From the NCBI GenBank assembly GCA_963924565.1, contig OZ004608.1, forward strand, positions 7,440,001 through 7,504,000: DNA of 64,000 nt, given 5' to 3'. Below are positions 4,626 to 50,408 of this stretch, piece by piece. The notes below the pieces were generated by a model that was not told where the DNA came from, made no database searches, and saw only the letters and a list, made by a program, of their open reading frames with translations. The stretch's first letter is position 1. Every line of letters begins with the position of its first letter. The translations under genes were made by a program, and so were the position numbers. This DNA is from Ascidiella aspersa. Its lineage: Eukaryota.

Positions 4626-7600
4626 ATGAAGGGCCTTGTTTTGGTAATAATGGTTATTTGTGTGAGAAGTGGTTACTCCGAAACCTGGCATGTTTTTGGT
4701 AAATACGAGTATCACATTTCAACAAGCATACGAAGCTTTGATGGAGCTCAGTCAGCTTGCAACGCATTGAATGCAAACCTGGCGAAAGTAAACACCAATG
4801 AGATTCAACAATTTTTGACGGACACAATTAACAGCTTATCAGGTGAGGTTTGTACTTATAATGGCAACACAACTGCATACTGACTGGATTTCATTTTCAG
4901 GTTCTGTTAATACACTTTTCATCGGTTTAAAGTGGAACGCGGCACAAAAGGAATACCAATGGGAGGATGGAACTATTTTGGATGTGGCTCAGTGGGGTGC
5001 AAATCAACCAAGCGGTACTTCACACAAATGTGTTGTGATGAACAACAACCTCGATTATTTTTGGGATAATGTGCCATGCGGAAATTGGAACCACTACATA
5101 TGTTCGAAAAAGTTAGGTGCGTTGTAAATATCCCTATATACAATTACAAAAAACATTATAAAATTAATTTACGACGTAAAAATGTATAGGTTTCAATAGA
5201 TATAATTATGGCCATTTTATGAATGTACCCATTTCGGCTGTAGATATAAATAACCAACTCTTATTTGAAACATCCCAAATATTAAAACCCAGCCTAGTGA
5301 CGTATAGCTAATTGACGTATAATATTCCACTCAAATACGCCTCGCCTTACTGAAAAAAAAAAATATATAAAATAAAACTTCGCTTGTTCTATGCAACAAC
5401 ATATTCACCATTAATGCAATAAAATCCATAATTAAAGGGACCACTACCACAACTGCTACCAAAGCGACGTTGCCATCTACATTATCAACCACAACGACAA
5501 CACCATCTAAATTAACAGGTGCTGTGACTGCAACAACAGGAATGCTCCCCAAACCGACAATTTCATCTACTACATCAAGAAATAGTTCAGATGAGGCAGT
5601 CGGTGAGATAAAATTGTTAACTGATAGGAATTGCAGGGTTTAAAAAGCATAACATAAAAAAATATTTCTTGCTTTAAGGTATCAACCCTACCAACGATAG
5701 TGACGACTTGGCAATAATTATACCTGCTGTCATCTGTGGAGTTGTATTTCTTTGCATCGTGGTTGCACTGGTAACTTATAAAGTGTAAGTGCTTTAGGTC
5801 GAACGAAATGCAGCAGGAGATTTAAAGCTAATATCATTTGTAAAATGTGTTTCAGGAAATACCACAAACCTCAAAATACGCTCACACCAACAGCCAACAA
5901 CCGTGCAGGTCAGTCTGTGAAAATATTTTATTGCTATTTTAACAACAGCTTGAACGACAAAAGGTTTGTTGGACTAATTTAACAAAAAAGACCTAATGAA
6001 AAAAAGTTTTTTTTACCAAGGCTTGATGTAGCTGTTCTATATATGGATATTCGTATGGGTCAATAGTTCGTTTTATGTTAAGTGTTATTGTGTATGCGGT
6101 TTACGTTAAATATACGCTAAACAAACAAAGAGTACTTTTTTAACTAAACTGAAATAAGATGTAAATAAATGTAGACATGTCACAATTGTTTTACATTTTT
6201 TTTTTAACCTTATCCTGTTTTGAATTTGTATCCTTTGGAAGATTTAAATGTCATTTTCTTTGCCAGTTGTTATTAGTATTGAAAACGGTTAAAAGGAAAT
6301 TTATTGACAAAGCGTTTACGCACACTTTAGAGCTTTGGTTAGCCGAAGAGCTCACTTTGGTATATGGGTAATTAATTTGAAAGTGTTTTATTACATTGAT
6401 GGATTACTGGAGAAAATCAATTATGAAAAATAAGAGCGAACGGCAACAAGACCGGTAACTGTTAACTTGTCAAGGCAAACTGCACAACTGCACTAAGCAG
6501 TATCAGGCTTACTTTTTTCTCAAAAGTAACCACGTAGTATAAAACTGCAGAACAGCACGTATACGCCGACATCGACGACGCACGCCACGCCCCCGAGAGC
6601 CCGAGCCACGCCTATTCCAGCATCGAAAACGCGAGCTTGCCGGCCGACAGCGCCCAAATCAGCAATGACGACTACTCCAGACTGAACAGGACGGGACTTC
6701 CCCAGTCGGGACCTTCCCACACCAACTTGGTTTACAACATGGACGTCAAGATGCAGCAGCTGAGCGTGGTCGAGTACAGTTCCATTGATAATGATGTGCC
6801 TGGTGCTCCGGGTTCAGTACAAAGGCGCAGGGCGAACGATGGCAATCTGTACTCGGTCGTGAGAAAAGGTGATATATTTGCTTTGTGTTTTGCTTTGTGT
6901 TTTGCTTTGTGTTTTGCTTTGTGTTTTGTTTAGTGATATGTTATATCAGCGGCTTGGATTTTTTTTGAAAAACAAGTCGTGGATTAATTTGTGTAAATAC
7001 AAGACGCGCCTGTCTATTTTTAAGCAGGTGCCGCGGTAATAAAAAGGATCGGTGTACATTAAAATTAAATTAATGTTAGACCACAGTAAAATTAGTTAAT
7101 TTGACAACCAAAATACATAATTATATAGTGCTTTGATCTTTAATATACTTGCTTCAAAGTAAGCCGGCGTTGGCTTTCTGTCGCACATAAATTAAAACTA
7201 GACGTTACATTAATGCGTTGTTATTTACATACCGTTTTGAAGAGTCCACTAAAATATGTTAAAACTGAAAGCTAGACAAATTCGTTGTTGCTTACATATT
7301 AGATTTTTGTTGTAAACACACATGTGTGTTCATTTTTCTTGCTTACATATTGTTCAAAAATCGCACCTAACCTTCAGCTCTTTAATTTCACCCTTAAAGA
7401 CGCGTTTATACTACGCCTGCGCTGAGCTAAACTGGGCGTGAAATTGCGGTATACTATCGCTGCGTAACAGACAAAGTAAAATCACTTTCACGCTTCGATG
7501 GCGGTCGATCAAAGCGTGAAAATCGCTCCAAAGCGTACCTTTTAGGTAGCTGCAAGGAGCTTTAGTTTAGCAAAGCGTCAAAAGCTCGAACAGTATAATT

Positions 7601-10862: not shown

Positions 10863-13496
10863 ATGGAAAGTTTGCGTATCTTGATGTTATGTAGTGTGAT
10901 GGGATGTGGTTACACTGTTACCTGGCATGCATTTGGTGATTACGAGTACTACATTTCACCAAGTAATATTACATTTCAACAAAACTTCAGTGGAGCTCAA
11001 TTAACTTGTAACGCAATGAACGCAAGCCTGGCGAAAGTAAACACCAACGATATTCAACAGTTTCTGAGCAAAACTATTACCAACACGCCAGGTAAAATAA
11101 ACTTCCTGTAAATCCTGTTATGTTATTTACAGTACATAAAACAAAATCTTGTCAATTTTTATAGGCTCTATACATGCACTTTACATCGGTTTAAAATGGA
11201 ATGAATCAAGAAATGAATACCACTGGCTTGATGGAGCAATATTGGATGTGTCTCATTGGGGAACAGGGCAACCAAGCCACAATGAGACATGTGTTGCCAT
11301 GGCAAATTATATCAGTTATTTGTGGGATGATGTTTCCTGTGAGGATTTGACGTCATACATTTGTTCAAAATACTCTGGTACTTGTTTGTACTCGTTTTAG
11401 TGGGTCTAAAAGAATAAATAGTTATGGTAAAAATATAAAAACTAAACAAATGTAAATGTAATAGTTGTATTACAGAAGAAACGATTTTACATTATTAGGT
11501 ATAAGCAATAAAGAAAATGAATCTTAAATGATATATAGATTTGTTTGTTTACTGGTTAGATATTTAGTCTAAAAAATAGGTTTAACGGGAAAGTATAGTA
11601 CCTCCCATTTGACACGATGTTGTATCAGTAGGCTTAAAAGTTGTGCTAATTATTATTAGCATATCATGTCTAGTTGAATAATCGAGTCTCCATCAACAGA
11701 AAGAACCACAACAGATATTGCAACAAGCGAAATGACACCTTCAGCTACACATGCTGAAACAACAGACGAGTTCAAAGCCACAACCCTTAATTCAGGTACA
11801 TAACCCAACAAGTCTACAACCTTTATTGCTAAACTCGTCTGAAATAACCGATATGGGTAACTACAATATTTTTGTCACGCTGTCACATTCCTAACTGACA
11901 CAAAACACAGTCGACGATCGTTCTTTATTACGTGACTTTTCGTTTTGGTTGTTAAGATGTTCTTTTAGTCTTACACTTCGCACGTTTATCGACTCTCAGA
12001 ACGAATGATACATTATTTCATTGAAATTTTTTTGAATGTAAGGTGGTATAGACGGCATATAATATATTTTTATATTTCCGAAAAAAATGATATCATTTGC
12101 TAAAACATGGTACAGAAGTCAAGTTTTTTGTCATCCAGCATAACAATGCTAAATATGTATTAACAGTACATTTAATGCAGGCAAAACAACAGCAACAGCA
12201 ACTATGGCAACACAATTAACAACAACATCAACAATTGCAAGTCCAGGTACATAGCTCGGGATTTCGTTTCGTAATTAAAAGTACAAAAACAAAGTTTGTT
12301 TGAAATAACTTTCTAGACTGCTTAGCGATTGTGTGCCGTTAAGAAATTTCCCCAAAATAATATAATTGATAACAAAAGATTAATAGTCCGTCTTATTTCA
12401 TGAACTAAGAAACCTTTAAAGCTTTAAATTAATTGATAACGTTAGATTAAAATGCATATGAAAATTATTGTTCTGATCAAACAAAGAACGTTCTTGTATT
12501 TAAAGTAGGATGCTGTTCATGTCACACTGATGATGAATTGAGTCTTACAACAATAATTCTGACCCACAAAAAAACTTTTACTTTACGTAGAATGCTGTTC
12601 ATGTGCTAATGATGACTTAAGTCTTACAACAATAATTTTGACTGCTGTTACTTCCGGAGTCGTATTTATTTGCATCGTTGAATCACTCGTCATTTGGAAA
12701 ATGTAAGTGGTTTCGAAATCGACATAAATTGTTAAAAGTTGGTTGACTTATAATGTTCATTCTAGGACACGTAACGGGAACGTAAATAATCTAGCACCTC
12801 CGAAAGTCGACTATACAGGTTTGGATTTTCTAAATTGGTTGTAAATATTCAATTAAGTTGCTGTATTTTAAAATAATCAAATACAGGTATTGTTACTGTT
12901 GTACTGAACTATCTCGTGGGATGTATCTTAATGTGTAGACATGTTGATGTTTGCGGCCGAAACACTTAAACTATGTCCAGCATAGTCACGAACAAGTTAA
13001 TTTGTGTTCACAGAAAATTCGTAGTCGCCTATGAAAATATATTGTGATATATATTTGCGCATTTCATTAATATATGTATAAGCATTTTTGTCTCGTCTTT
13101 TGTTAGCAGTTTATAAATTATTACCGCGAATATTTTAAGGATATATAAAGTTGTGTTACCGCTACGATTTTTGACGAATCTGTCTGTTTAGTGTTTTGAC
13201 AGATGTAAAAAGTGTCCAAAATGTGCTATGCACTGTGTTTTTTTGACTGTTCGGTAAACGTTGCGAACTTTGCCTTCTCTTAAAATTACAATGCTATACG
13301 TTAGAGTTGATGTGCACTTCTTGCAGAACGGCAGGTAAACTTTGACGTCGAACCAAAGCAAAACACAAACGTAAAACAACCAAACAAGCCACTACCGTTC
13401 GAAGAAGATGATTCAGGTTACCTTAAACCCCACTCGACTTATCCGCTTCAAAACCTGGAAGATGACCAAGGCTACATCGAGTTTTCCCCTTCTTAA
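10863..13496 (+). CDS. G2: type I CTLD-mucin-TM receptor, short-tail class (CCSC, TM Glu, DxGY motifs), about 312 aa
   Basis: Exons 10863-11091, 11165-11377, 11700-11795, 12181-12246, 12591-12702, 12766-12818, 13327-13496. CTLD QPS/WDD; TM exon ECCSCANDDLSLTTIILTAVTSGVVFICIVESLVIWKM; tail EEDDSGYLKP...EDDQGYIEFSPS*. Confidence 0.88.
12500..12645 (+). repeat. Two-copy tandem repeat (82-bp period) spanning the G2 TM-exon acceptor
   Basis: AG acceptors end at 12508 and 12590, each followed by (g/a)atgctgttcatgt...agtcttacaacaataatt. Confidence 0.9.
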
Positions 13497-16539: not shown

Positions 16540-19500
16540 ATGGAAAGTTTGCGTATCTTGATGTTATGTAGTGTGATGGGAAGTGGTTGCACTGTTACCT
16601 GGCATGCATTTGGTGATTACGAGTACTACATTTCACCAAGTAATATTACATTTCAACAAAATTTCAGTGGAGCTCAATCAGCTTGTAACGCAATGAACGC
16701 AAGCCTGGCGAAAGTAAACGCCAACGATATTCAACAGTTTCTGAGCAAAACTATTACCAACACGTCAGGTAAAATAAACTTCCTGTAAATCCTATTATGT
16801 TATTTGCAGTACATAAAACAAAATCTAGTCAATTTTTATAGGCTCTATTCATGCACTTTACATCGGTTTAAAATGGAATGATTCAACAAATGAATACAAC
16901 TGGCTTGATGGAGCCATATTGGAGGTGTCTCATTGGGGACCAGGGCAACCTAGCCACAATGAGACATGTGTTGCAATGGCAAAGTATACCAGTTATTTGT
17001 GGGATGATGTTTCCTGTGAGGATTTGACGTCATACATTTGTTCAAAATACTCTGGTACATGTTTGTACTCGTTTTAGTGGGTTTAAAAAAAAAATAATTA
17101 TGGTAAAATTATAAAAAAACTATAAACAAATATAAATGCAATAGTTGTATTACAGAAGAAACGATTTTACATGATTAGGTATAAGCAATAAAGAAAATGA
17201 ATCTTAAATGATATATTTGTTTTTTTTTGTGTATACTGGTTAAAATTCTAGTCTAAAAAACAGGTTTAACGGGAAAGTATAGTGCCTCCCATTTGACACG
17301 ATGTTGTATCAGTAGGGTTAAAAGTTGTGCTAATTATTATTAACATATCATGTCTAGTTGAATAATCGAGTCTCCATCAACAGAAAGAACCACAACAGAT
17401 ATTGCAACAAGCGAAATGACACCTTCAGCTACACATGCTGAAACAACAGACGAGATCAAAGCCACAACCCTTAGTTCAGGTACATAACCCAACAAGTATA
17501 CCTCTATAATTTAACAAAGTTACAACCTTTATTGCTAAACTCGTCTGAAATAACCGATATGGGTAAGTAAATTATTTTTGTCACTCTGTGACATTCCTGA
17601 CTAACACAAAACACAGCAAACGATCGTTCTTTATTACGTGACTTTTCGTTTTGGTTGTTAAGATGTTCTTTTAGTCTTACATTTCGTACGTGTATACTCT
17701 CAGAACGAATGATACATTATTTCATTGACATTTTTTTAATGTAAGGTGGTATAGACGGCATATGATATATTTTTATATTTCCGAAAAAAATTATATCATT
17801 TGCTAATACATGGTATAGAAGTCAAGTGTTTTGTCATCCAGCATAACAATGCTAAATATGTATTAACAGTACATTTAATGCAGGCAAAACAACAGCAACA
17901 ACAATTCTGGCAACACAATTAACATCAACAATTTCAAGTCCAGGTACACAGCTCGGGATTTCGTGTTTTAATGTAAAGTACAAAAACAAAGAAAAAGTTT
18001 GTTAGAAATAACTTTCTAGACTGCTTAGCGATTGTGTGCCGTTTAGACATTTCCAAAAATAATTTACCCAATTGACAAGTAAGAAACCTATAATGCGTCA
18101 AATTAATTTATAACATTAGCTTAAAATGCACAACGAAATTATTGTTGCAACCTGTTCTAATCAAACGAAAAACGTTCTTGTAGTTAAAGTAGGGTGCTGT
18201 ACATGTGCTAATGATGATCTAAGTGTTACAACAATAACTCTGACCCATGAAAAAACTTTTACTGTACGTAGAATGATGTCCATGTGCTAATGATGACCTA
18301 AGTCTTACAACAATAATTCTGACCCATGAAAAAACTTTTACTGTACGTAGAATGCTGACCATGTGCTAATGATGACCTAAGTCTTACAACGATAATTCTG
18401 ACCCACGAAAAAACTTTTACTGTACGTAGAATGCTGTTTATGTGCAAATGATGGCCTAAGTCTTACAACAATAATTCTGACTGCTGTTATTTCCGGAGTC
18501 GTATTAATTTGCATCGTGGAATCGCTCGTCATTTGGAAAATGTAAGTGGTTCCGAAATCGCCATAAATTGTTAAAAGTTGGTTGATTTATAACGTTAATC
18601 ATTCCAGGACACGCAACGGAAACGTCAATACACTGGCACCTCTGAAAGTGGACTACACAGGTATGGATTTTTTTTTAATTTTATTGAATATATCCAATAG
18701 GGTTGTAGTATTTTAAAATAGCGTCAAATGCTGTTAATTGTTTCTTAGTTACACATATTGTAGTAATTTTACCACTGAAATTGTATTGTTGTACTAAAAT
18801 CTTTCGGTGATGTAGCTTTGTATTTGTAAGCATGCTCGTGTTTGCGGCCATTACACTTAAAATATGGCCAGCAAAATCACGAACAAGTTAATTTGTGTTC
18901 ACCAAAGATTCATAGGGCACAGTCGCCTATGAAAATGCATAGTGAATGAAAAAAATATGAGTCGTTATAGATGACGCGTTATTTTCTTTAGCTATTAACA
19001 AATGACCAAAATATATTGCTCCACACAAAAATAGAAAATATTGTTTCTGTCTTGGTCGGAACAAAATGTATTCCCTATTAAGACGAAACTGAAAACTTAT
19101 TGGCGATGAAAAGTTCATTTATAAATTCGATTGACATGCTTTTAACCAACGTTTCAGGCAACCTATTTAAGTCTCCTTGAGCAAAATGCTTAACAATTAC
19201 AAGAAGAGCTGTTTTTAATTAATATTATGTATAAGAGTGTTGACTTTTTTTGATAAGAATTTATTTAGTAGATTGTAACCGCGAATATTTTAAGTTAAGC
19301 TAACTGCCGCGATTTTTGACAAACGTGTTTTTTCAGTGATTCCACAAATGTGTTTTGCTATTATTGGGTTTTATCTTACCTAGAACTATTAACACTGATC
19401 TATATTAGGTGTAAAAAGAGTTCGATAGGTTTGACGTACTGTTGTACTGAGTATTTTTTAACCGTTGGCAATACGTTATGAAGTTTGCCTTCTTCTTAAT

Positions 19501-19712
19501 GACAGTGCTATAGGCTATAGAGTTGATTTTGATTTATTGCAGAACGCCAGGTGAACCTTGAAAATGAACCAAAGCAAAACACTAATGTGAAAAAACCAAA
19601 CAAGCCTCTACGGTTTGACGAAGACGAGTCAGGTTACCTTAAACCTAATTCGCACTTCCCCCTTCAACATCTGGAAGATGACCAAGGCTACATCGAGTTT
19701 TCCCCTTCTTAG
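16540..19712 (+). CDS. G3: recent duplicate of G2, short-tail-class CTLD receptor, about 310 aa
   Basis: Exons 16540-16768, 16842-17054, 17384-17479, 17884-17943, 18430-18541, 18608-18660, 19543-19712. TM exon ECCLCANDGLSLTTIILTAVISGVVLICIVESLVIWKM; tail DEDESGYLKP...EDDQGYIEFSPS*. Confidence 0.88.
18185..18482 (+). repeat. 79-bp tandem repeat (4 acceptor-bearing copies) spanning the G3 TM-exon acceptor
   Basis: AG acceptors end at 18192, 18271, 18350 and 18429, an exact 79-bp period. Confidence 0.92.
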
Positions 19713-26273: not shown

Positions 26274-29200
26274 ATGGAATGTATTTACTTAATACCTCTA
26301 TTTAGTTTGGTTGGAAGTGGTTACTGTAATACGTGGCACTCTTTTGAAAGCCACAAGTATTACATTTCAACAAAGGCACAAAACTTTGATGGAGCTCAGT
26401 CGGCTTGCAACGCTTTAAATGCCACCCTCGCAAAAGTTAACACCAACGAGATTCAACAGTTTCTGGCCAACACCACTAACAGCACTTCAGGTAAATATAT
26501 GTTTAAAAACATCATAGTTTTGCAAAGTATGGTTAATATTCGACCTGGTTATCTTTTAGATCTTTGGAGCGCATTCTACATCGGTTTAAAGGGGAACACA
26601 TCTACAAATCAATACCATTGGTTGGATGAAACTATGTTGAATGTGTCCCAGTGGGGATCAGGGCAGCCAAATCACAACCAGACATGTGTTGTGATGTCAA
26701 AGAAAATCAGTTATTTGTGGGATGATGTTTTCTGTAGCTTTATAAGCAACTTTATTTGTTCAAAACTGACCGGTATGCTTGTTAATCGTTTAGTTGTATT
26801 ATTCAGTTAATTTGAAATGTTTTTTTTAATAACGGTATATACAATTTTTTTAACGATAAATAGAGAAATTTGATACAAATATAAAAAATAAGAACTGTGT
26901 GGCAAATATGTACAATAAGTAGTATGAAAACATTTGCCAGGTCTGTTTGCTTAGTAACAATCCCAATAGAAAATTATACCAGGGATGCGCTATTTGACGC
27001 ATGGCCTACGTTAATCTCCGAAAAATCCTCACCAAAACAGAAAATCGCAATTTTTTATTGAAATTATCACGTTTGCAAAGTGCATGGAATAATTGCGAAA
27101 CGGTGTGGGCATGAATTGCAAACCTAGTTTCCTTTGCAATTTTCCCAACTATACGAAATATACAACGCTACTATCGTTTGTCCAACCAACACAGAACAAA
27201 CAACAACACCAACTGTGAAACACGAAACAACAACAATGATATCGACCAGTGGTTCAGGTTAGTGAACAAACGACTTTTAACTCAATCAACAATAAAACAG
27301 ATACAAACTAATTTCACTTTAAATTTAAAACATTCTTCCAAATGGAAATATATATATATATCAGGGTATTGGTGAGAAGTTAAAAAAGTAAACTTTCAGA
27401 AAGTAACATGTTGAAGTTTGCCAGTGCGACACATATGAGTAATGTAAATTTGTATTTTTACGATTCAATGGTAATTGCCTTCACCAATAAAATCATCTCA
27501 ATTTCTAAAGCAGGGGTTCTTAACCAGGAGTACGTGTACCCCTTGTTGGTACGAAGCACCAAAGCAGGGGTACGACATGCAGTGTGAAATTATGTGTTAT
27601 TTAGGCATATTTGGGAAGAATGCGTAATTTACGAAAAGCAACAACAAAAAGCCATTAGTGAATTTTCTGATTGTTCGTTTTAAATATTGTGGAACATGCA
27701 AGACTGCTTTTAATGCATACATTCAACACATATGTTCAAAATACATTGATTTTAATTCCTATTATTACAATTTTATACTCTTCCGTTGGCCATTAGACAG
27801 GGGTTACGAGAAAATTTCATAAAACCTTAAAGGGTACGAGCGCTAAAAGGTTAAGAAACCCTGATCTAAAACTTAAATTTTACCTTTTATTTTTCCAAAA
27901 AAACAACCGTCCTTCCACAATCACCGCGAAATATCACCGGAACAGAAATGCTTTCATCGATGGCCGCTTCTACGACTATTGGGACAACAATAACATCAGC
28001 ATCAAATCCTTTAACTACAGACGAAATAACACAGAGGCCAGGTAAAACCAGTGGACGTTGAATGAAGCGAAATTTTAAAGTGTGCCTGAGGGACATTATT
28101 GGTAAAAGGATTTTGTCCATTTACGATACAATTAACAAATGCACAATTCCACGATATTTATAGGCCAGTGCTTCGCAACCTTTTTTGGCTTGCGGCGTCC
28201 TACAGAAATAATTAATAGTTTGCGGCACCCTTGCTCGTAACGTTACAATTTCCGAGATTGAAACAACATATTAACTGTGCAACAAGGTTGATAGATTTTT
28301 TTACTTATTGGCACTTTTATCGTACACAAAAAATTGTATCAATAAGTTTATAAATAAAGCAAACATTGGAACCTATACAGAATTTAAAATATCTCTCATC
28401 ATATTTGAGCGTTAAAAATCGCACCCTTGTGCCGCGGCACCCCGGTTAAGAACCACTAAAATGGGCGTTTTTTTAACCCTAAAATACAGGTTGCTTTCTA
28501 AAATAAAACAATCATTTTTCCACAACCTATTACAGCAACAGTATCAGAAAAATCGTCATCCATGGCCGCGTCTACAACTATTGGAACAACTGTGACGTCA
28601 GCTATCAATTCTCTAACTACAAAAGAACAAACATCGAATCCAGGTAAACAGTGGTCCAGAGATATAAGTTTGAAATAACATATTTAGTACAATCGCAACA
28701 TGACAAACAATTGCTTTGAAGGCAACTAGTTTAAGGAAGTTTTACTATATGGTTGTAACAATAGTGTTTGTACCAGATTGCAGTTCTTGTAGCAAGCACA
28801 ACTACGGAATTCTGATCATTATTTTAGCCGTTATGAATTGCGGCATGGTATTGATTTGCATCATCGAAGCTCTTGTGATATGCAAAATGTAAGTGTAAAG
28901 GATACCTCAGTATTTGTAACATATCTACTGTAGTTGCAGTTTTAATTACTCTAGTCGACGAACTACTTATTTTTTAATAACTTTACTTTAATCTAGTATT
29001 GTAGGCAAAATGACTTAACCTACAGATGTAATTTACTTAGGCAAATTACTTATCAAAATCAAATTTTAACCCAGTAATTACATTGGGGCTTTATTTTATT
29101 TTTACAAGGTATTCCAATGGTATGATAGTGTACAAAACTGAATATGGGTTTTACATGATATATCACCTTAGAAAACAACAGAGAACAGCGGACCCTATTC

Positions 29201-30074
29201 CTACAGACAGAAACAACACCGAAAATAACAACAGAAACAACACCGAAAATAGCAATAGAAAAAACAGCAACGATGATAACAGAAACAACAGCAACGAAGA
29301 CAACAATAGCAACAACAGCAACAATGATAACAACAGCGACAGTAGCAACGATTACAACAACAGAGACAACAGCAACGTTAACAACATCTACACCAACCAA
29401 CCAAGTAATTTTTTCTGTTACTTCGTATAGGACTTTAAAACATCAGGTTAGAACTTTTATCAACATATTTCGTTCCAAACCATACATTGAACTTTTTTAA
29501 TTCTTTAATTAAAGTTAGCTTAATTTGACTACGGTACAAAACATTATTGATTTGTCTATTTCACGATCGAAAGAAAATGTGGTTTGAACCTGAAAATAAA
29601 GCCTTAAATATGTCACTGAATCTTTCAATGACCTTCACTCGGTTATAAACAGATCAAAACAATGACACACACATAATGAGAATTAGCTAAGTTATTTATT
29701 TAAAAAAAATACCAATCAATCATTCCATTAGTTTATAAATCTGGAGCGCCAAAACCTAGAAACAGGTTCGTTCCATTATTTACGTTCGTTAGCAGCTTGT
29801 TGCGCCATTTCTCACATTAGAGCAACAATGCTAAGATTGCAAAGGATTGTTTGTCGACATGTTGCTTAAGTTCTTCTTATGAGTTATTGTTGTACACTCT
29901 GCAGGTCAAAGCGCCTACTATAACCTGGAAATCAATTCTGGCGTCAAAGCGCAATATGAAAACCTAGACACAGATTTCGATGAAGGCGATGCAGGTTACA
30001 TGGAACCAAACCAAATCCTTTCCATTCAAAAGTTGAAACAAGATGGTCAGGTTTACGTTGAGTTTAACGCCTGA
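26274..30074 (+). CDS. G5: type I CTLD-mucin-TM receptor with TM Glu, Asn-rich linker and ITAM, about 370-403 aa
   Basis: Exons 26274-26490, 26560-26772, 27195-27257, 27946-28041 (weak acceptor), 28536-28643, 28777-28888, 29172-29404, 29905-30074. CTLD QPN/WDD; TM exon DCSSCSKHNYGILIIILAVMNCGMVLICIIEALVICK; last exon YYNL-EINSGVKAQ-YENL...DAGYMEP...QVYVEFNA*. Confidence 0.85.
27511..27863. mobile_element. hAT-type MITE in a G5 intron
   Basis: TIRs caggggttcttaacc / ggttaagaaaccctg; flanks ttctaaag / atctaaaa (degenerate 8-bp TSD). Confidence 0.75.
28166..28458. mobile_element. Degenerate hAT-type MITE in a G5 intron
   Basis: Termini cagtgcttcgcaacc / ggttaagaaccacta with subterminal gcggcaccc motifs. 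Confidence 0.55.
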
Positions 30075-34379: not shown

Positions 34380-37300
34380 ATGAAATATTTGTTTACAACG
34401 ATTATCTGCTGCTGTTTAATAGAAAAACGTTTTGGGCACGTTTTTGCTAATTACGTAACCTGGCACGCTTTTGGTAACTACGAGTATCACATTTCAACAA
34501 AGGGCGCTTTCTTTAATGGAGCTCAGTCAGCTTGCAAAGCAATGGATGCAAATCTGGCCAAAGTAAACAGCAGTGATATTCAACAATTTCTGACCTTCAC
34601 TATTGACAATATGCCAGGTAAAATAAAATAATTATAAACTGTCATAAATTTGTCCACAACAACTAACTGATGATGATTGTCAGGTTTTTTAAATGCACTT
34701 TACATCGGTTTAAAGTGGAATATTACAACAATTTCTTACCACAATCGCAGGATAAGATACTTATTTGAACTATAATTATTTTTATTTAACAGTACATGTT
34801 AAAATTTCCTAGGTTCTCCAAATACACTTTACATCGGTTTAAAGTGGAACGGTTCGACGACAAAATACCACTGGCTTGATGGAACGGTGTCAGATGTGGC
34901 TCAGTGGGGAACAAATCAACCAAGCAGGAATGATAAATGTGTTGTTATGTACAAGAACGACGGTTATTTGTGGGACGATGTGCGATGCGATACTAGCACA
35001 GCATCGATATGTTCAAAATACTCAAGTATGTATTTAAAACAAAATTAGTCAATTTAAACCAACAAACGTAGTTCGACTTTGTAGCATGTTTCGCTAGATA
35101 TACGTTGCCTATAATGAGTGTGAAAAGAAGGACCTAAATGTCTGCCAACTTGAACTAGGATAATTGTATAATTTACTCGCTTACTCGTGTTCAAATTTCA
35201 AATTTTTTACTTGCTACCACAAAGTAATAATGATATTGGAACTGTTTGGTTTAATATTAAAATCTCGCACTGTAATTGGCTGAGAATGTATTTTCCACTT
35301 CAAAAAACAAATTTGAAGCTTAAGTTGCCAAAAAATAAATTTTAACATGTTTATGGCAATGTTTAGCGGGCGGGCGTATGGTCTAAAACTAACACAGAAA
35401 GATTTTGGTGGACCCAGATAAAAGATTAGTTTAATTAGACAATGCTTTTTATTTCAATGAGACAATTCTACCAATCAAATGGTCCTAAATACATCAATTA
35501 TATTGAAAATGTGTAATCCTTGTACAGAGCAATCGTCCACAACAGGACAATCGGATATACTGGTAACAAAACCAACAATAGATCAAGAAACGACATATGG
35601 TTCAGGTAATATAACCGAGCAAACTCGTTTCGTAGGCAATTTTCGTAATACAATAGCACTTTAGATACTGGATAAAAGGCGTACAGAATTAACTTTGGTG
35701 TATATAACGGTAATCAAGCTAAAACGAAAAGTTAAAAAACTAAATCGCTTTTTGTCTGTTCTTTCGAAATCTATTAAATACTGAAATACATAAATTTGTA
35801 CTCGTTCATACATCATAAAGTATTTGAGCATAATTATTAAATATGGTTTTGAGACTTTTAAGTTTAATATTGTTTCGCTACATATTAAAAACGTTTTTTA
35901 TAATTCTAATAGTTCATGTTTGACTATCCAGTTGCCTTAAAGTTGGTAGTTAAAATAGTTATTTAACAAAATAAACTTTTCTGATGTGGTAAAACATATT
36001 GTACAGCTAGAAATACGAGTCCTACTAAAGGCGACACTTCAGTTGATGACGATGGAGATCTTACAGTTATCATAGTTGCCGTTATTTGCTCGGTTTTATT
36101 CGTTTGCATCCTGGTGGCGTTCGTAATATACCGAAGGTAATTTACGATATTTTAAACAATCAAAAGAAAAAAGTTAACTAAGCAATATCCAAATTGCGTT
36201 GCAGGAAATGCCATACAGAAGACAAATCACAGATGCCCGTTACGGATAATGGTAGGTGACTAATCATACCAGAAATAACCAAATTCTGCCAAGTGTAGTA
36301 AATAATGCTAACTTCGAAAGTGCCTATCTTTGTTTAATTTAAAGTTGAACTGTGGAATCTCACAAATTATGTTGGAGGAAAGTATGTAGAAATTTGTAAC
36401 CTGGGTTTGCCAATTATGTTAAAGTTTAGTATGGGCACTAGGCTTTTAAGTTGGAGATTTTTTTGTTCTCGTTCGTTAGTACATGTATTGTGTTGTGCAA
36501 AATATGAAAAACATGTGGAATGTTCTGAATTCGTATTATAGCTAGATAAAATTTCTTAGTTATATAACGATAAGTTACAACAGTGTACTTCTAATCTAGC
36601 ACACGAACACTGATAAAAAACATTTTAATAAACATCATTTTGTTGTAAAACGGTTAACGCCACTAATTGATAAATTAGTATTATTGTCCGTTATTCCGTT
36701 AAATCGTCATGATCTTGATGATTTACGCGCACGGTATGTTTGATGCCAAAATATCCACGTTTTCCAAACCAATTTTATCCGGTTATGCTTGATTTCATTA
36801 TCATGCAAACTTTCAACATCTTTTACCGATTGCAGAGCAGCACGTGTACGCCGACATCGATTACAACAACGTCAATTCCAGGCGTTCACACCACCACTAC
36901 TCCACCATTCACCACGTGGATGCTACAACTTTGGACGCCAACACAGCAGATGGGGAATACTCCCAACTGAACCTGGCGGAACTCCCCTTGGCATACCCCA
37001 TCTGTAACATGGAGCCGAAAGAGCCTCGACTGAGTGTGGATTACAGCTCAACAAATGTGGAACAGAAAGTGCCACACGAAACGAAACGCGTTCCCGCTTA
37101 CGCCACGGTAAACAAAGGTACCGCAACTGTTTTTGTAAGATCCTTTTAGTTCTAAACAATCATATGCTCGAAATAGTATCGACATTCTTGCTTATCAAGG
37201 CGCTAGATTTTATATCTGTTTACCTGACAAATTAGACTGTATTAGTTGCGAATTGCCAGCAACGTTTATTCAGAAATTTTAAAATTTTATTAAATAAAAA

Positions 37301-38370: not shown

Positions 38371-41300
38371 ATGAAATATTTGCTTTTAATTATACTTGTT
38401 CGGTGGGAAATTGTTTCTGTGTTAATTGGCACGCATTTGGCAACAACGAGTACTACATTTCAACAAATGTGCAAAACTTTGATGGAGCTCAGTCAGCTTG
38501 CCACGCAATGGATGCAAATCTGGCAAAAGTAAACACCAGTGAGATTCAACAGTTTTTGACCGACGCAATTAACAACATGCCAGGTAGAATGAAACAATTA
38601 TAAACTGTCATAAAGTTGTCCGCAACAAGTAACTGATGATGATTTTCAGGTTCTGTAATTACGCTTTACATCGGTTGAAAGTGGAACGCATCAACAGATA
38701 TATATCACTGGTTTGATGGAACGATGTTGGATGTTGCTCAGTGGGCACCAGGACAACCAAACAGTATTTCACACGAATGTGTTGTGATGTCAAAGTACCT
38801 CGGTTATTTATGGGATGATCGACCATGCGATACTTGGACCTCCTACATATGTTCCAGATACTGGGGTAATATGTTATTTTTTACACATTTGTGGAATGAT
38901 ACGCGATGCGATAATTGGAATTTAAATATGTGTGGAAAATGTTGTGGTACGTTGGTGATATGTGAGGTATATTTTACGCCTGATGACAAAGTTTGATCAT
39001 TTTTATAACTATTAAATAATTTTGCATTTAAGAACAACTAAATAATGTTGCGTTTGAATTTCACTTTTAATTAAAAACCACAATTTTTCACTGACGATGA
39101 TATAACGTTCAAATCTCAGGAAGGCTATTATCCTTTAAATCATCTTAAGCAGGATAATAATAAAAACAAATATTACCTAAAATAAAGTAATATTGCTATC
39201 TAAACATAAGAGCATATACAAAAAGGGGTGTTGGTGTATTATTAATATAAATATTACTTTAATAGCAGCTAAGATATTTCCAAGGCAGGCCCCTAATTTA
39301 ACAACGAGATTCGATTAGCGATTTGAGTGATATAATACCAGCTTCTATTGTCCAAAACACTTACTCGCAAATGTTTTCCAAGAGCTGCCCAGCAGGGTTG
39401 CAGGCACACAAATGGCATGTGCTGGGGAATGTTTGCTTGAATGTCCAACTTTTGGTAAAGAACGAACAACATTGGGTGTCCAACTGCTAGACCTGCAGAA
39501 AAACACTAAATGTCCTTTTGTCGTGTTTTACCATCAAGTTTGTCGCTCAACAATAAGCAATTGGCTGAATATACCTCAATCTTGAGCATCAGTTACGATT
39601 TTACTTTGTTCTAAAAGTTACAGTCAGGGCCGTTTTATGTCTTGAAGAGGCCCTAAGGTTAAGCACTTAAAATTTCGGCGCCCTATACGTTTTATTTTAA
39701 ATTTAAACACAAATATGCTGTTTTCAATCTCATTATTGATATATATTAAACTTTGGGTCGCGACACAGCAGGATAATGTTAACCTACTTTAAATAATAAG
39801 CTCAGAATGCATATCACGAGATGTTTTGATAGAGCGTAAACCCAAAAATCAAAAAACACAAACCTTTCCACAAAGTCGGTGCGGGGCCTTTGCCAAAAAA
39901 ATTGTGAAATACTTTTTTTTGTTTCGCAACTAAGGATAGAGTTCTTTTTGCTTCGAAGTTATTTTTTGGAAAATATTACAAAAAATATTTAATGAAAAAC
40001 AAGCTTTCTAACGCTAAAGCTAATTTTTATCTATAGTAAAAACATAACCCTTGCTCGTTTTACTTATTAAATTTTGCTTTTTTGACCGAACTAATTGGGT
40101 GGTTTGTGAATCACAAATGCACTAAAATCCCTAGTCTTGAATATCAATGGTAGATTTTTTGTTCCAAAATATTTATGTATGATCATGTTGTCGATTTAAC
40201 ATTTATTAATAGCTTTTTGTTTTAGATAACAGTTTTGTGGGATGCCCTACGCAAACGACAGTTACGTTTGTCTTGGATTTACTGAGACAGAATGAATCAT
40301 GAACAGTTGAAAAATACTTTAAAATTTATGTTACTCTCATCTACAGTGCAATCTACGCCGGAACCAACCACAGGAGAATCACCTACGCCAGAACCATTCA
40401 TGACAGAACCATCTACGCCAGAACCATTCATGACAGAACCATCTACACCAGAACCATCAGCAACAGTCACATTACCTATTGCTGCAACCACGTTTTCATC
40501 CGACAAACCTGCAGTAGGCATTTCAACCATACCATGTTCGGGTAACAAAGCAGGGAATTAATGTTTGTTTAGTTTGGTAACTATAACGTTGCTTGCGAAA
40601 ACTAAATAATTTGATAAATATATCAAACATGTTTGTTGGTCAAACTTTAAGACATGCAAAATAAATGGATAATCAAAAATCCGATTTTTTTTTTATAAAA
40701 TGTACTTCATGTTTTAGTTTCAAGTTTCATGTCCACGAAAGGCGATACTTCAAGTGATGACGAGGGTGGTATTACGACTATCATTGTCGCCGTCGTTTGT
40801 TCGATTGCATTTGTTTGCATTGTGCTGGCTTTTGTGGTATTAAGAGGGTAAGCAATTTCAACTCAAATACGGTTAATGAAAGTGTTATAGTTTTTTTTTA
40901 TTTGTTTCAGAATATGCAGTCAAACTGAAAAATCAGCGAAGACGCCAACAAACATAGGTAAGACCAATTATATATTTACCTAAATCGAATCGTTTGTTTT
41001 GCAATATAAGTGATATTCATGATTTATCTACAAACACATAAAATGAGACATTTCTTTTGTTGCCACTTGTTTTATTTGTTCATTAGTGACAGAGTATGGC
41101 GGGCATAGTACCTAAGGATTCCTTCTTTGAACCAACGCGACACATGCGTTCCAGCTTCATAAATGTAGTCCCTTCGTTAACCGTAATATTATTACGTCTA
41201 TCAAGGTGCAATATTCTCTATCGATTACAGATGAACACCTGTACGCCGATATCGACGAAACCAAGATCGGATACAGGCGCCCGAGTCACGAATACTCCAC

Positions 41301-48200: not shown

Positions 48201-50408
48201 TTTGCATTATTGTGGCGTTCGTAATATACCGAAGGTAAGTGATTTTAAACACACGAAAGAAAAATCGAAGTACAATACTAATATTGCATTACAGGAAATT
48301 CAAGCCAGCAGGAAAATCACCGATCCATGCAATAAACAACGGTACAGGTAACGTACCACCCTTTCAAAATTGATTTAGGAAATAACTAATACAATTAATG
48401 GACGTACAACTTTAATGTTGTGTTCTTAAACCTTATGGGCAAAGTCTGTGTAGGCTCATGATGAGTTCAAATCAGGGGTGTCCAACATGAGGCACGCGTG
48501 CCAAATGGACACGCGACCTAATAAAAATGGCACGCAAGCCCCCCAAAAATACAGCGAATTTTCAAAACAGCTAAATTTGTTATACAGCCAATTGTCATTG
48601 TTTATTCACAATACAAAACAATCCAAGTAATTACGACAATAAACAATAACTTCTGATTTTATAACACTATATATTGTTTTTATTTTTTGTATAAAACCGC
48701 TGTTGCATTAAAAAAAATAGTTGCTAAACTTTGTCACTGGAAGAAGTTATAAGATAAACATTGGCACTTCGGCATGTTTGAGTTGGCCACCCCTGGTTTA
48801 AATAAATGAAAAATGTAAACAATGTTTAAAAAATACAATTCATAACGCAAGGTTAATGCATTCTCGATTGATTGTAGGGCAACACGTGTATGCTGACATC
48901 GACTACAACAACATAGAGTCCAGGCGTCCGAGCCACGAATACTCCACCATCGACACACCAGGGGTTAAAGCTCAAGTGGACACAGAAGAAGGCGAATATT
49001 CGCACCTTAATTTGTCTGGACTTCCCGTAACTCAGCCGGTCTGTAACATGGAACCGAAAACGCCCAGGCTGAGTGTGGAGTACAGCACCACAAAAGACGA
49101 AATCATGATTTGTGACGAAAACAAAGTTCCGGTTTATGCTGTCGTTAACAAAGGTAAGTTTCCACTACATGTTTGACGAATTTGGAAATGCATAAGCAAT
49201 TTAACATTGAAATAATAATAATGCATGACTTTGTTGTTAAATTACGCAAAGGCCCACATTTCTGTCACTCGGCAACAAACCAAAAGTTTGCAAATGTCAA
49301 CCCGCACAATTTTACTGTTATTTCCAATTTTGTAGTAACCTACGTTGAAGGATGTAACAAAGGTAAACAAACTCGGCGGTACCGGGAGCACAATGAACGG
49401 CATACACAGAATATATTTTTTTATTTATAAAACGGATGTTTTGGACTCTACCGCTTGTCCTAATGATTATTTTTGGACAAGGAATTGCCAATACTATATA
49501 GACTCAGTTTTAACGAATGACTTACGATGTTTTTAGTGTTTTACAAATGTGTTGATTTCCCAAGCTTAAAACTTATGACGGACATAACCGCAATACAGAA
49601 CATTTTACTTAGTATCACTGCTAGCATAGCGTTAGGGGTTCCAAGGCATGTATTATACCTACCACAATATAATCACAGGGAAACGTGAACAAGCAAACAC
49701 GATTCAGCCTCCCGCCGTTGAACCAAACAACGAAACTGACGTCATGGAGAACAGCGCAACTGAAAAGAAAAAGGGAGAGGCGGAAAGCGAAAGTGTCCCG
49801 GTTTATGCTGTTGTCAATAAAGGTAAAGCAAATAACTATAATAGGGCCTGGTTTATGGATCTGAACAATTATGGCTGTTTAGTGAACAGCTGTTAACGAA
49901 GTAGAGAAGCTATTAAGCTCACAATAGATGCTATTATTAAGAAAGCTTTTTAAAATAATCTTTTCTGATTTTCGAACAGAATAATGATGCCAGAATAACG
50001 TATTTTAATTTCTGGAATGATTAAACAGCTTATTTATATAAAACTAAAACACAATTATACACCATAGTATGATTTACATGCATGCAATGGCAAGAAATAA
50101 CTAAGCCGTAACCTGAACTGAATAATATTACTCAAAGCGAAATCTCAAATTACATATATAGAGTCGCCGTACAATAATATAATTTCAAGAATTTCACAGT
50201 CAACACAACGTATAACCTTTATCTTAGACGATTCAGTTTGTTTTGTGTTGCCTTGAGTTTCTTGAATACAACATCACATTTGTTAATTTGGACAGGAAAA
50301 CGAGATAAGGTGAACGCAAATCAGTCTACCGGTACGTCTAGCAACTCCAATGACGTCACTACTGATGATAACAACACCAACCCATTCGGAAAATTATCCC
50401 ACGAATAA
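45252..50408 (+). CDS. G8: type I CTLD-mucin-TM receptor, long tail with duplicated VPVYAVVNK motif, about 460 aa
   Basis: Exons 45252-45459, 45524-45736, 47272-47523, 48105-48234, 48295-48347 (or 48341), 48878-49153, 49679-49822, 50296-50408. CTLD QPT/WDD; (PSTSR)n stalk; TM LTIIIVAVICSVLFVCIIVAFVIY; tail YADI, IDYNNI, EYSTI, EYSHL, and PVYAVVNK twice. Confidence 0.88.
45984..46286. mobile_element. Degenerate hAT-type MITE in a G8 intron
   Basis: Termini cattggttcttaa / ggttaataattactg with subterminal ggggtg(c/a) motifs. Confidence 0.45.
47277..47437 (+). repeat. Coding 15-bp minisatellite (CCATCGACGTCAAGA)n encoding a PSTSR mucin stalk
   Basis: About 10 units, 4 of them identical, inside exon 47272-47523. 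Confidence 0.92.
48473..48795. mobile_element. hAT-type MITE in a G8 intron
   Basis: TIRs caggggtgtccaac / gttggccacccctg; TSD gttcaaat / gtttaaat. Confidence 0.82.

What the first reader, a model, noticed from the sequence alone, without database searches (positions are those of the whole stretch)
29905..30074. Canonical ITAM in G5, absent at the aligned positions in G2/G3
Seen: YYNL-x9-YENL fits YxxL-x(6-12)-YxxL, and both half-sites are also YxN (Grb2-type). The exon aligns without gaps to the G2/G3 last exons, where those positions read NFDV/NLEN and QPNK/KPNK, while the two distal tyrosines are kept. Inference: graded activating strength within the class through gain or loss of an ITAM. 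A lectin receptor with its own full ITAM is unusual compared with vertebrate CLRs, which use hemITAMs or FcR-gamma/DAP12.
Basis: partly seen in the sequence, partly recalled or inferred. Interest (0 to 1): 0.75.

Follow-up and report, generated by a model that had tools for sequence, protein, structure and literature searches.

The report
ITAM-like tyrosine pair, lectin receptor tail
The last exon of one sea-squirt-type lectin receptor gene does spell a pair of tyrosine signalling motifs resembling an immune activation motif, but the spacing is not the classical one and it is unproven that this exon is still read in frame with the membrane anchor.

Summary
The motif is real. Window 29905-30074 follows an AG acceptor, is open for 55 codons and reads YYNL-x9-YENL. 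G2 and G3 have no tyrosine there.

It is not a canonical ITAM. The spacer is 9, which fits the relaxed x6-12 rule but not the classical x6-8 rule. It lies in the exon half with no detectable similarity to G2/G3 (2 of 23 residues). No other tail in the 308-Mb genome resembles it.

The main problem is the gene model. The TM exon leaves 2 bases, but the ITAM frame needs 1. Six of six paralogs examined bridge this with a 47/53-nt mini-exon 60-71 nt after the TM donor. In G5 that position runs into a stop. Direct splicing gives a stop after 5 codons. Only untested G5-specific link exons restore the frame.

One RNA run gave 0 reads on any G5 exon.

Points in favour: two Syk/ZAP-70-type kinases are encoded in the genome, and the conserved tail half shows purifying selection. 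ITAM-like pairs also occur in other tails of the family, and G8's has classical spacing.

Verdict: a plausible phosphotyrosine docking module, unproven as an ITAM, of modest interest.

The parts
26274..26490 (+). G5 exon 1: signal peptide and the first half of the C-type lectin domain. It leaves 1 base.
   Evidence: ATG start and gtaaat donor. Pfam Lectin_C E 3.2e-13 over the read-through ORF 26274-26807. Ten paralogous heads in the window.
26560..26772 (+). G5 exon 2: the second half of the lectin domain (QPN, WDD, three of the four core cysteines). Phase 1 to 1.
27195..27257 (+). Thr/Ser-rich stalk exon 1 (63 nt, phase 1 to 1).
   Evidence: AG/GT flanks, open frame, phase check.
27946..28041 (+). 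Stalk exon 2 (96 nt, phase 1 to 1).
   Evidence: It is paralogous to stalk exon 3.
28536..28643 (+). Stalk exon 3 (108 nt, phase 1 to 1).
28777..28888 (+). Transmembrane exon with a juxtamembrane C-x-x-C and a Glu inside the hydrophobic stretch. It ends AAA AT|gtaagt, so 2 bases are left over.
   Evidence: The donor is conserved with G2 and G3.
28955..29027 (+). Stretch at the position of the family's mini-exon. The acceptor sits in the conserved place, 66 nt after the TM donor. The frame hits a stop at 28989 with no usable donor before it. A 23-nt in-frame alternative (29005-29027) lies at its 3' end.
   Evidence: The sequence is identical in DNA contigs of runs X1 and X2 (table 8).
29172..29404 (+). 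Candidate G5-specific link exon (233 nt, phase 2 to 1). It is an Asn-rich low-complexity tandem repeat with a gtaatt donor. As 29207-29404 it is phase 1 to 1, which would also fit a form that skips the TM exon. It is untested.
   Evidence: (repeat periods 24, 27, 51, 54). There is no RNA support.
29905..30074 (+). The finding: the terminal exon, 55 codons plus TGA, entered with 1 base carried in. YYNL lies at 29916-29927 and YENL at 29955-29966. The distal tyrosines lie in GYMEP and VYVEF.

Best explanation
The exon is the genuine terminal coding exon of G5. G5 is one member of a tandem family of type-I receptors built as signal peptide, C-type lectin domain, Thr-rich stalk, single TM and tyrosine-motif tail, in what is most likely an ascidian genome.

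Its first third has diverged beyond recognition from its sister genes. In that third it has acquired two Y-x-N-L sites nine residues apart.

If the exon is still joined in frame to the TM exon, these sites most likely work as phosphotyrosine docking sites. A Src-type kinase would phosphorylate them after receptor clustering. The pair could then hold the tandem SH2 domains of one of the two Syk-family kinases (ITAM-like use). Each site alone could also bind a Grb2-type SH2 through pY-x-N.

Shown: the motif, the frame of the exon class, the receptor architecture, and the presence of Syk-family genes.

Inferred: translation of this frame in G5, phosphorylation, and the binding partners.
For: - The frame is open for 55 codons after a conserved acceptor. 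Chance of that after an AG in this window is 4.3%, or 260 of 6040 sites.
- The exon class is under purifying selection in this frame: G2 against G3 dN/dS 0.107/0.645, and G5 against G2 codons 24-43 0.39/0.93.
- The G5 ectodomain, stalk and TM exons are all intact and in phase.
- The family's tails are enriched for Yxx[LI]. Sixteen of 41 tail tyrosines have L or I at +3 (my count from the listing), so tyrosine motifs in these tails are not random.
- Two of the 9 tail exons tabulated match the relaxed ITAM pattern.
- Two SH2-SH2-kinase ORFs (601 and 606 aa) match SYK at E 9e-96 and 2.8e-99.
- In-frame link exons exist on paper.
- Receptors that carry their own ITAM are known in ascidians and fish (PMC5465252 and PMC3528668, passages seen). 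Lectin-to-Syk signalling through a hemITAM is reported in oyster (PMC13027682, passages seen).
Against: - The conserved mini-exon that bridges TM and tail is present in 6 of 6 paralogs examined (G1 by eye; G2, G3, G6, G7, G8). In G5 it is broken by a stop at 28989.
- One RNA run gave 0 reads on every G5 exon, with about 6% of the run read.
- The spacer of 9 lies outside the classical 6-8 (PMC10008955).
- There is no acidic residue just before either tyrosine.
- The motif sits in the unconstrained part of the exon.
- No paralogue in the genome shares it, and none was found in the protein libraries, so conservation cannot be shown.
Confidence: 0.38

Rival explanations
1. The tail is uncoupled. 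G5 has lost the family's mini-exon. Its membrane-bound product therefore ends a few residues after the TM segment, either by a stop in the broken mini-exon or, with direct splicing, by a stop after 5 codons. The ITAM-like exon would then be 3' UTR or a recently orphaned exon that has not yet decayed.
For: - An acceptor sits at the conserved place (exon start 28955), but the frame stops at 28989 and there is no in-frame donor.
- Six of six paralogs examined keep an intact 47/53-nt mini-exon.
- The same sequence is present in the DNA contigs of two runs, so this is not an assembly slip.
- There were no RNA reads on G5.
- The motif-bearing half of the exon shows no constraint.
Against: - The tail ORF is still open over 55 codons (4.3% by chance), and its C-terminal half keeps the class signature.
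- All other G5 exons are intact.
- Several in-frame link exons with ordinary splice sites exist.
Confidence: 0.32
2. The exon is translated but does not act as an ITAM. The two YxNL sites and the YVEF site would be tyrosine-based YxxΦ sorting signals of an endocytic lectin receptor, or independent single docking sites such as Grb2-only sites. The ITAM-like spacing would be coincidence.
For: - The relaxed pattern arises in 2.7% of shuffles of this tail and is expected at least once among the 9 tails in 12.7% of cases.
- The spacer is non-classical.
- All three sites fit Y-x-x-hydrophobic.
- Both half-sites are Y-x-N.
- The motif lies within one exon, whereas classical ITAMs are split over two exons (PMC3528668, passage seen).
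Against: - Two hits among 9 tails is more than the shuffles predict.
- Both half-sites have Leu at +3, as Syk-family SH2 domains prefer (recalled, not tested).
- Syk-family kinases are present in the genome.
Confidence: 0.2
3. The product is secreted. The last stalk exon and the last exon share the same phase, so skipping the TM exon gives an in-frame soluble lectin, with or without 29207-29404. In that product the 'tail' would be extracellular and the tyrosines would be irrelevant to signalling.
For: All stalk exons leave 1 base, and the last exon needs 1 base. The stretch 29207-29404 is a symmetric 198-nt exon in the same frame.
Against: The acidic, tyrosine-rich tail with a conserved GY..P and Y[IV]EF signature looks like a cytoplasmic tail. 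The TM exon has good splice sites. There is no RNA evidence either way.
Confidence: 0.1

Closest known systems
Classical ITAM of vertebrate adaptor chains (FcR-gamma, DAP12, CD3, Ig-alpha/beta)
   Same: It has two Yxx[LI] half-sites in a short acidic tail. The TM exon also carries juxtamembrane cysteines and an acidic residue within the hydrophobic stretch, as those adaptors do (recalled).
   Different: - The spacer is 9, not 6-8 (PMC10008955).
- The motif lies in one exon and is not split over two (PMC3528668).
- It is attached in cis to a large lectin ectodomain.
- There is no sequence similarity to those chains.
Receptors that carry their own ITAM: zebrafish G6f-like (PMC3528668), Halocynthia hemocyte glycoprotein with two ITAMs (PMC5465252), Drosophila Draper (PMC6219719, listing only), Fc-gamma-RIIA (recalled)
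   Same: The ITAM-like pair is in the receptor's own tail. In print the relaxed x6-12 definition is applied to this kind. G6f-like also combines a YxN Grb2 site with an ITAM.
   Different: Those receptors have Ig, EGF or other ectodomains, not a C-type lectin domain. Their ITAMs have been tested by mutation or binding, and G5's has not.
hemITAM C-type lectin receptors: Dectin-1, CLEC-2, DNGR-1 (PMC10008955); oyster CgCLec-TM1 and CgCLec-HTM (PMC13027682)
   Same: A membrane lectin with a tyrosine motif of its own that is reported to recruit Syk.
   Different: Those receptors use a single YxxL. The vertebrate ones are type II with an N-terminal tail (recalled). G5 is type I with a C-terminal tail and two YxxL sites.
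Tunicate multigene receptor clusters with ITIM/hemITAM tails (Botryllus FcoR genes, PMC12582321)
   Same: A linked, rapidly diversifying receptor family in a tunicate, with variable tyrosine-motif tails. Syk, Grb2, SHP and other pathway genes are reported as present.
   Different: It is a different protein family. In the passages I saw, no C-type lectin member is described in that paper.
Ciona intestinalis XP_026691695.1 and XP_002129718.2; Clavelina lepadiformis CAK8689445.1
   Same: These are the nearest proteins found. They have the same N-terminal lectin layout. XP_026691695.1 and CAK8689445.1 also have the Thr-rich stalk, single TM and short tail.
   Different: Identity is at most 43% over the lectin domain. 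Their tails are unrelated and show no tandem YxxL in the sequences returned.

Membership tests
ITAM (immunoreceptor tyrosine-based activation motif) | Two Yxx[L/I] half-sites | tested here: met
   YYNL and YENL are in the open frame of 29905-30074.
ITAM (immunoreceptor tyrosine-based activation motif) | Spacer of 6-8 residues (classical consensus, PMC10008955) | tested here: not met
   The spacer is 9. The x6-8 pattern does not match and the x6-12 pattern does.
ITAM (immunoreceptor tyrosine-based activation motif) | Lies in the cytoplasmic tail of a membrane protein, that is, in frame behind the TM segment | tested here: inconclusive
   The TM exon leaves 2 bases and the exon needs 1. The conserved mini-exon is broken in G5. 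Only untested link exons restore the frame.
ITAM (immunoreceptor tyrosine-based activation motif) | Motif split over two exons, a mark of the classical homologous ITAM modules (PMC3528668) | tested here: not met
   Both half-sites lie in the single terminal exon.
ITAM (immunoreceptor tyrosine-based activation motif) | Conserved in paralogs or orthologs | tested here: not met
   The own-genome search gave 7 matches at E up to 10. Only the exon itself was strong, and the other tails I read lack the pair. The protein libraries gave nothing.
ITAM (immunoreceptor tyrosine-based activation motif) | A Syk/ZAP-70-type tandem-SH2 kinase is available in the organism | tested here: met
   L008:1119-2921 and L009:1123-2940 each have two SH2 domains and a Tyr-kinase domain. 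SYK matches at E 9e-96 and 2.8e-99, and ZAP-70 also matches.
ITAM (immunoreceptor tyrosine-based activation motif) | Phosphorylation of both tyrosines and bivalent binding of the tandem SH2 | not testable with these tools
   This needs peptide binding and cell assays.
ITAM (immunoreceptor tyrosine-based activation motif) | The gene is expressed | tested here: inconclusive
   There were 0 reads on G5 exons in the one RNA run of the same species label, with about 6% of the run read and the tissue unknown.
C-type lectin-like domain receptors | C-type lectin domain with the four core cysteines | tested here: met
   Pfam PF00059 E 3.2e-13, 50.8 bits against a cut-off of 22.6. The cysteines are seen in exons 1-2.
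C-type lectin-like domain receptors | Canonical sugar-binding triplets (EPN or QPD, plus WND) | tested here: not met
   G5 reads QPN and WDD. These motif definitions are recalled. Sugar binding is therefore uncertain.
hemITAM lectin receptors (Dectin-1 type) | Single YxxL in an N-terminal tail of a type II protein | tested here: not met
   G5 has an N-terminal signal peptide, a C-terminal TM and tail, and two YxxL sites. The definition is partly recalled.
Grb2-type SH2 docking site | pY-x-N | tested here: met
   YYN and YEN are present. Binding was not tested. A Grb2 homologue is reported in Botryllus (PMC12582321). I did not look for one in this genome.

The most novel reading that the evidence does not exclude
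This ascidian-type family of type-I C-type lectin receptors carries ITAM-like signalling modules in cis. Examples are G5 (x9), G8 (x8, classical spacing) and three paralogs just outside the window (x12). In the G2/G3/G5 subclass the lectin is fused to an adaptor-like membrane module with juxtamembrane cysteines and an intramembrane Glu. In the closest invertebrate relatives of vertebrates, lectin recognition and ITAM-Syk signalling would then sit on one chain. That would be either a state ancestral to, or a convergent alternative to, the vertebrate split into a lectin receptor plus FcR-gamma or DAP12. Individual genes would gain and lose the motif rapidly.
Probability: 0.15. Interest if true: 0.7.

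Novelty: new variant of a known kind. Interest (0 to 1): 0.35.

Why it matters
If the tail is translated and binds a Syk-family kinase, it would be a lectin receptor with a full tandem tyrosine motif of its own, in a tunicate. That would bear on how lectin recognition became coupled to ITAM-Syk signalling before vertebrates. A 2016 preprint found no proof of such a pathway in invertebrates (10.1101/046789, passage seen). Since then hemITAM lectins have been reported in oyster (PMC13027682).

As it stands, the more solid result is at family level. This is a fast-evolving tandem cluster of lectin receptors with modular tyrosine-motif tails and a fixed layout of TM exon, mini-exon and tail exon. 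G5 is the one member in which that layout is disturbed.

Tried and rejected
**RNA evidence**
- The only RNA run offered (X3) gave 0 reads on G5 exons, so there is no splice information.
- Reads fell only on two intronic high-copy repeats.

**Protein libraries**
- The lectin ORF found nothing within the length limits: 8 candidates were collected and none scored.
- The 55-aa tail found no candidate.
- The representative search returned only distant lectin proteins, at most 43% identity. No orthologue's tail could be compared.

**Homology of the G5 tail to the long tails**
- BLASTP gave nothing.
- Smith-Waterman scores were compared with 1000 shuffles each. The number of shuffles reaching the real score was 1 for G7, 34 for G1, 94 for G8, 141 for G10 and 874 for G6.
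- The G7 match runs partly into what is intron in G7. I therefore treat it as a hint that short-tail exons are a 5'-extended version of the long-tail exon. It is not proof.

**Origin of the low-complexity stretch 29172-29404**
- It matches 36 Thr-rich repeat stretches genome-wide at 67-79% identity. That is uninformative.
- Its Thr-rich frame cannot be spliced in phase. Only the Asn-rich frame can.

**Splice-site strength**
- Real donors and acceptors in the cluster are too variable to discriminate between candidate link exons.

**Rejected**
- The idea that the mini-exon stop is an assembly error. The same sequence is present in the contigs of X1 and X2.

**Not examined**
- Mini-exons of G4, G9 and G10.
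- The minus-strand loci L013-L021, L024 and L025, where my ORF picker may have read the wrong strand.
- Grb2 in this genome.

**Literature**
- In searches I found no paper describing a tunicate C-type lectin receptor with a tandem ITAM.
- That library excludes most subscription journals, and paper supplements were closed. The supplements of the Botryllus paper could bear on novelty.

Full report
**What is in the window**

The window carries ten tandem genes on the + strand. Each opens with a signal peptide and a C-type lectin domain split over two exons. The heads start at 4626, 10863 (G2), 16540 (G3), 21525, 26274 (G5), 34410, 38403, 45252, 53164 and 56839. Pfam Lectin_C scores E 3.2e-13 on G5.

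Among the top hits whose sequences I read, those sharing this N-terminal layout are from Ciona intestinalis and Clavelina lepadiformis, at up to 43% identity. Two of them have the same layout of lectin domain, Thr-rich stalk, single TM and short tail. The source is therefore most likely an ascidian. Another note of this scan on the same genome says sea squirt. The genome has 308.6 Mb in 75 contigs.

**The observation**

Window 29905-30074 follows ctgcag. Only one frame is open: 55 codons and then TGA. That frame reads YYNL, nine residues, YENL, and then GYMEP and VYVEF.

The G2 tail (13329-13493) and the G3 tail (19545-19709) share the acceptor position and the entry phase. At the same ordinal positions they read NFDV/QPNK and NLEN/KPNK, with no tyrosine in their first 30 residues. 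This part of the finding stands.

Three qualifications apply.
- The ungapped alignment is an alignment by length only. In codons 1-23, 2 of 23 residues and 26 of 69 bases match G2, and pN 0.63 is about equal to pS 0.60. In codons 24-43, 8 of 20 residues match and dN/dS is 0.39/0.93. tblastn put a 2-residue gap into the first part. The last tyrosine is shifted by one codon.
- The spacer of 9 fits Yxx[LI]-x6-12-Yxx[LI] but not x6-8. The x6-8 form is the consensus given in PMC10008955. The x6-12 form is used in PMC3025359 and PMC3528668 (passages seen in all three).
- Chance matters. The relaxed pattern arises in 2.7% of 200,000 shuffles of this tail. At least one hit among the nine tail exons I tabulated is expected in 12.7% of cases. 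A six-frame scan of the window gives 34 matches to the pattern, mostly in non-coding frames or in the lectin domain's YIGL...Y.WL. The form with Asn at +2 in both sites arises in 0.02% of shuffles, but that pattern was chosen after seeing it.

**Is the frame a coding frame?**

For the exon class, yes. G2 against G3 gives dN 0.107 and dS 0.645 over 55 codons.

For G5, the frame is open over 55 codons. The chance of that after an AG in this window is 4.3%, or 260 of 6040 sites. The C-terminal half keeps the class signature. The motif-bearing first third shows no measurable constraint.

No other tail in the genome resembles it. The own-genome search gave 7 matches at E up to 10. The exon itself scored 4.6e-31 and the next best E 0.04. 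None of the other tails I read has the pair.

**The gene model problem**

The G5 exons 26274-26490, 26560-26772, 27195-27257, 27946-28041 and 28536-28643 are intact, and each leaves one base. The TM exon 28777-28888 ends AAA AT|gtaagt and leaves two bases. The last exon needs one.

The family solves this with a mini-exon of phase 2 to 1, placed 60-71 nt after the TM donor:
- G2: 12766-12818 (53 nt)
- G3: 18608-18660 (53 nt)
- G6: 36205-36251 (47 nt)
- G7: 40911-40957 (47 nt)
- G8: 48295-48341 (47 nt)
- G1: a 53-nt one, read by eye

That is 6 of 6 paralogs examined. G4, G9 and G10 were not examined.

In G5 an acceptor sits at the matching place (exon start 28955). The frame stops at 28989 after 11 codons and offers no donor. 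Direct TM-to-last splicing reads another frame, with a stop after 5 codons.

Enumeration found 61 AG-to-GT stretches of the right phase without a stop between the TM exon and the last exon. The plausible ones are:
- 29005-29027 (23 nt, gtaatt donor);
- 29172-29404 (233 nt, Asn-rich tandem repeat with periods 24/27/51/54, gtaatt donor);
- weaker ones at 28934/28940-28953 and 29075-29127.

Real splice sites in the cluster are too variable to choose among them. The stretch is identical in the DNA contigs of two runs, so the break is not an assembly slip. Because all stalk exons and the last exon share a phase, a form without the TM exon would also be in frame.

**RNA**

One RNA run of the same species label was offered. 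With about 6% of it read, 0 reads lay on any G5 exon. Reads fell only on two intronic high-copy repeats. This neither shows silence in other tissues nor gives any joint.

**Context that favours signalling**

Tyrosines in the family's tails are followed by L or I at +3 in 16 of 41 cases (my count).

G8 has YNNI-x8-YSTI, which has classical spacing and acidic residues just upstream. G6 has YNNV-x8-YSTI at the same place. Three paralogs just downstream of the window have YSSI-x12-YEAI.

The genome encodes two intronless SH2-SH2-kinase ORFs of 601 and 606 aa. Their best natural PDB matches are SYK (E 9e-96 and 2.8e-99) and ZAP-70. The top row of both tables is an entry titled EGFR that matches in two stretches. 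I did not examine it further.

The TM exons of G2, G3 and G5, and only those among the TM exons found, carry a juxtamembrane Cys cluster and a Glu inside the hydrophobic stretch.

**Comparison with what is known**

- Vertebrate lectin receptors signal through FcR-gamma or a hemITAM (PMC10008955).
- Oyster CgCLec-TM1 and CgCLec-HTM are reported to recruit Syk through a hemITAM (PMC13027682).
- An ascidian hemocyte glycoprotein with two ITAMs is known (PMC5465252).
- Botryllus FcoR genes carry ITIMs and hemITAMs, and Syk, Grb2 and other pathway genes are present there (PMC12582321).
- Zebrafish G6f-like has its own ITAM plus a YxN site. That paper notes that classical ITAMs are split over two exons (PMC3528668). 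G5's motif lies in one exon, so if functional it is convergent.

I saw passages of these papers, not whole texts. PMC6219719 (Draper) I saw only in a listing.

**Verdict**

The motif is real. The reading as a canonical ITAM is overstated, and its translation behind the membrane anchor is unproven.

My odds are:
- 0.38 that it is a phosphotyrosine docking module, with Syk and/or Grb2 as partners. Strict ITAM-Syk use is about 0.15 of the total.
- 0.32 that the tail is uncoupled from the TM exon.
- 0.20 that it is translated but serves sorting or single-site docking.
- 0.10 that it belongs to a secreted form.

Noticed in passing
window 48904-48951 (G8 tail exon 48877-49173); G6 tail exon 36829-37146: G8 has YNNI-x8-YSTI, which has classical ITAM spacing and Asp residues just upstream. 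Its gene model has an intact TM exon, mini-exon and tail exon. G6 has YNNV-x8-YSTI at the same place. This is a better ITAM candidate than G5's.
   Followed up: partly
L022, L023, L026 (G000:C2:7542616, 7533725, 7524673; just downstream of the window): Three further family members have long tails with YSSI-x12-YEAI, a relaxed ITAM pattern, as well as EYSTM and EYSHLN sites.
   Followed up: partly
window 12766-12818, 18608-18660, 36205-36251, 40911-40957, 48295-48341; G1 near 5855-5907: There is a family-wide layout. The TM exon leaves 2 bases. An intron of 60-71 nt follows, then a 47- or 53-nt mini-exon that restores phase 1, then the tail exon. G5 is the exception.
   Followed up: yes
L004 (G000:C2:7426153-7429293), about 12 kb upstream of the window: This paralogue combines a G1-type TM exon (no Cys cluster, no Glu) with a G2-type short tail. 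Its TM exon appears to end in AAAAT|gcaagt, a GC donor. This suggests exon shuffling between tail classes.
   Followed up: no
L008:1119-2921 and L009:1123-2940 (G000:C1:3416118 and C1:31715622): There are two Syk/ZAP-70-family genes, each an uninterrupted ORF of 601 or 606 aa with two SH2 domains and a kinase domain. They are intronless, which is unusual for this gene family in animals.
   Followed up: partly
window 28779-28886, 12593-12700, 18432-18539: The TM exons of G5, G2 and G3 alone carry a juxtamembrane Cys cluster (C-x-x-C or CC-x-C) and a Glu about 6 residues from the cytoplasmic end of the hydrophobic stretch. The other classes have Val or Leu there.
   Followed up: partly
window 27510-27960 and 28114-28566 (G5 introns): Two copies of a very high-copy repeat. 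Summed contig depth reaches about 55,000 against about 100 for the flanks. They are the only parts of the stretch with RNA reads. They look like short interspersed or MITE-like elements.
   Followed up: no
window 29207-29386: A tandem repeat with periods of 24, 27, 51 and 54 nt lies inside the TM-to-tail intron of G5. It resembles Thr-rich stalk exons, and all three + frames are open across the repeat itself. It is absent from G2 and G3.
   Followed up: partly
window 41167-41232 (intron upstream of the G7 tail exon): The in-frame translation of the 3' end of this G7 intron resembles the first 17 residues of G5's last exon. The alignment also spans the G7 exon start, and 1 of 1000 shuffles reached its score. 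Short-tail exons may be a 5'-extended version of the long-tail exon.
   Followed up: partly
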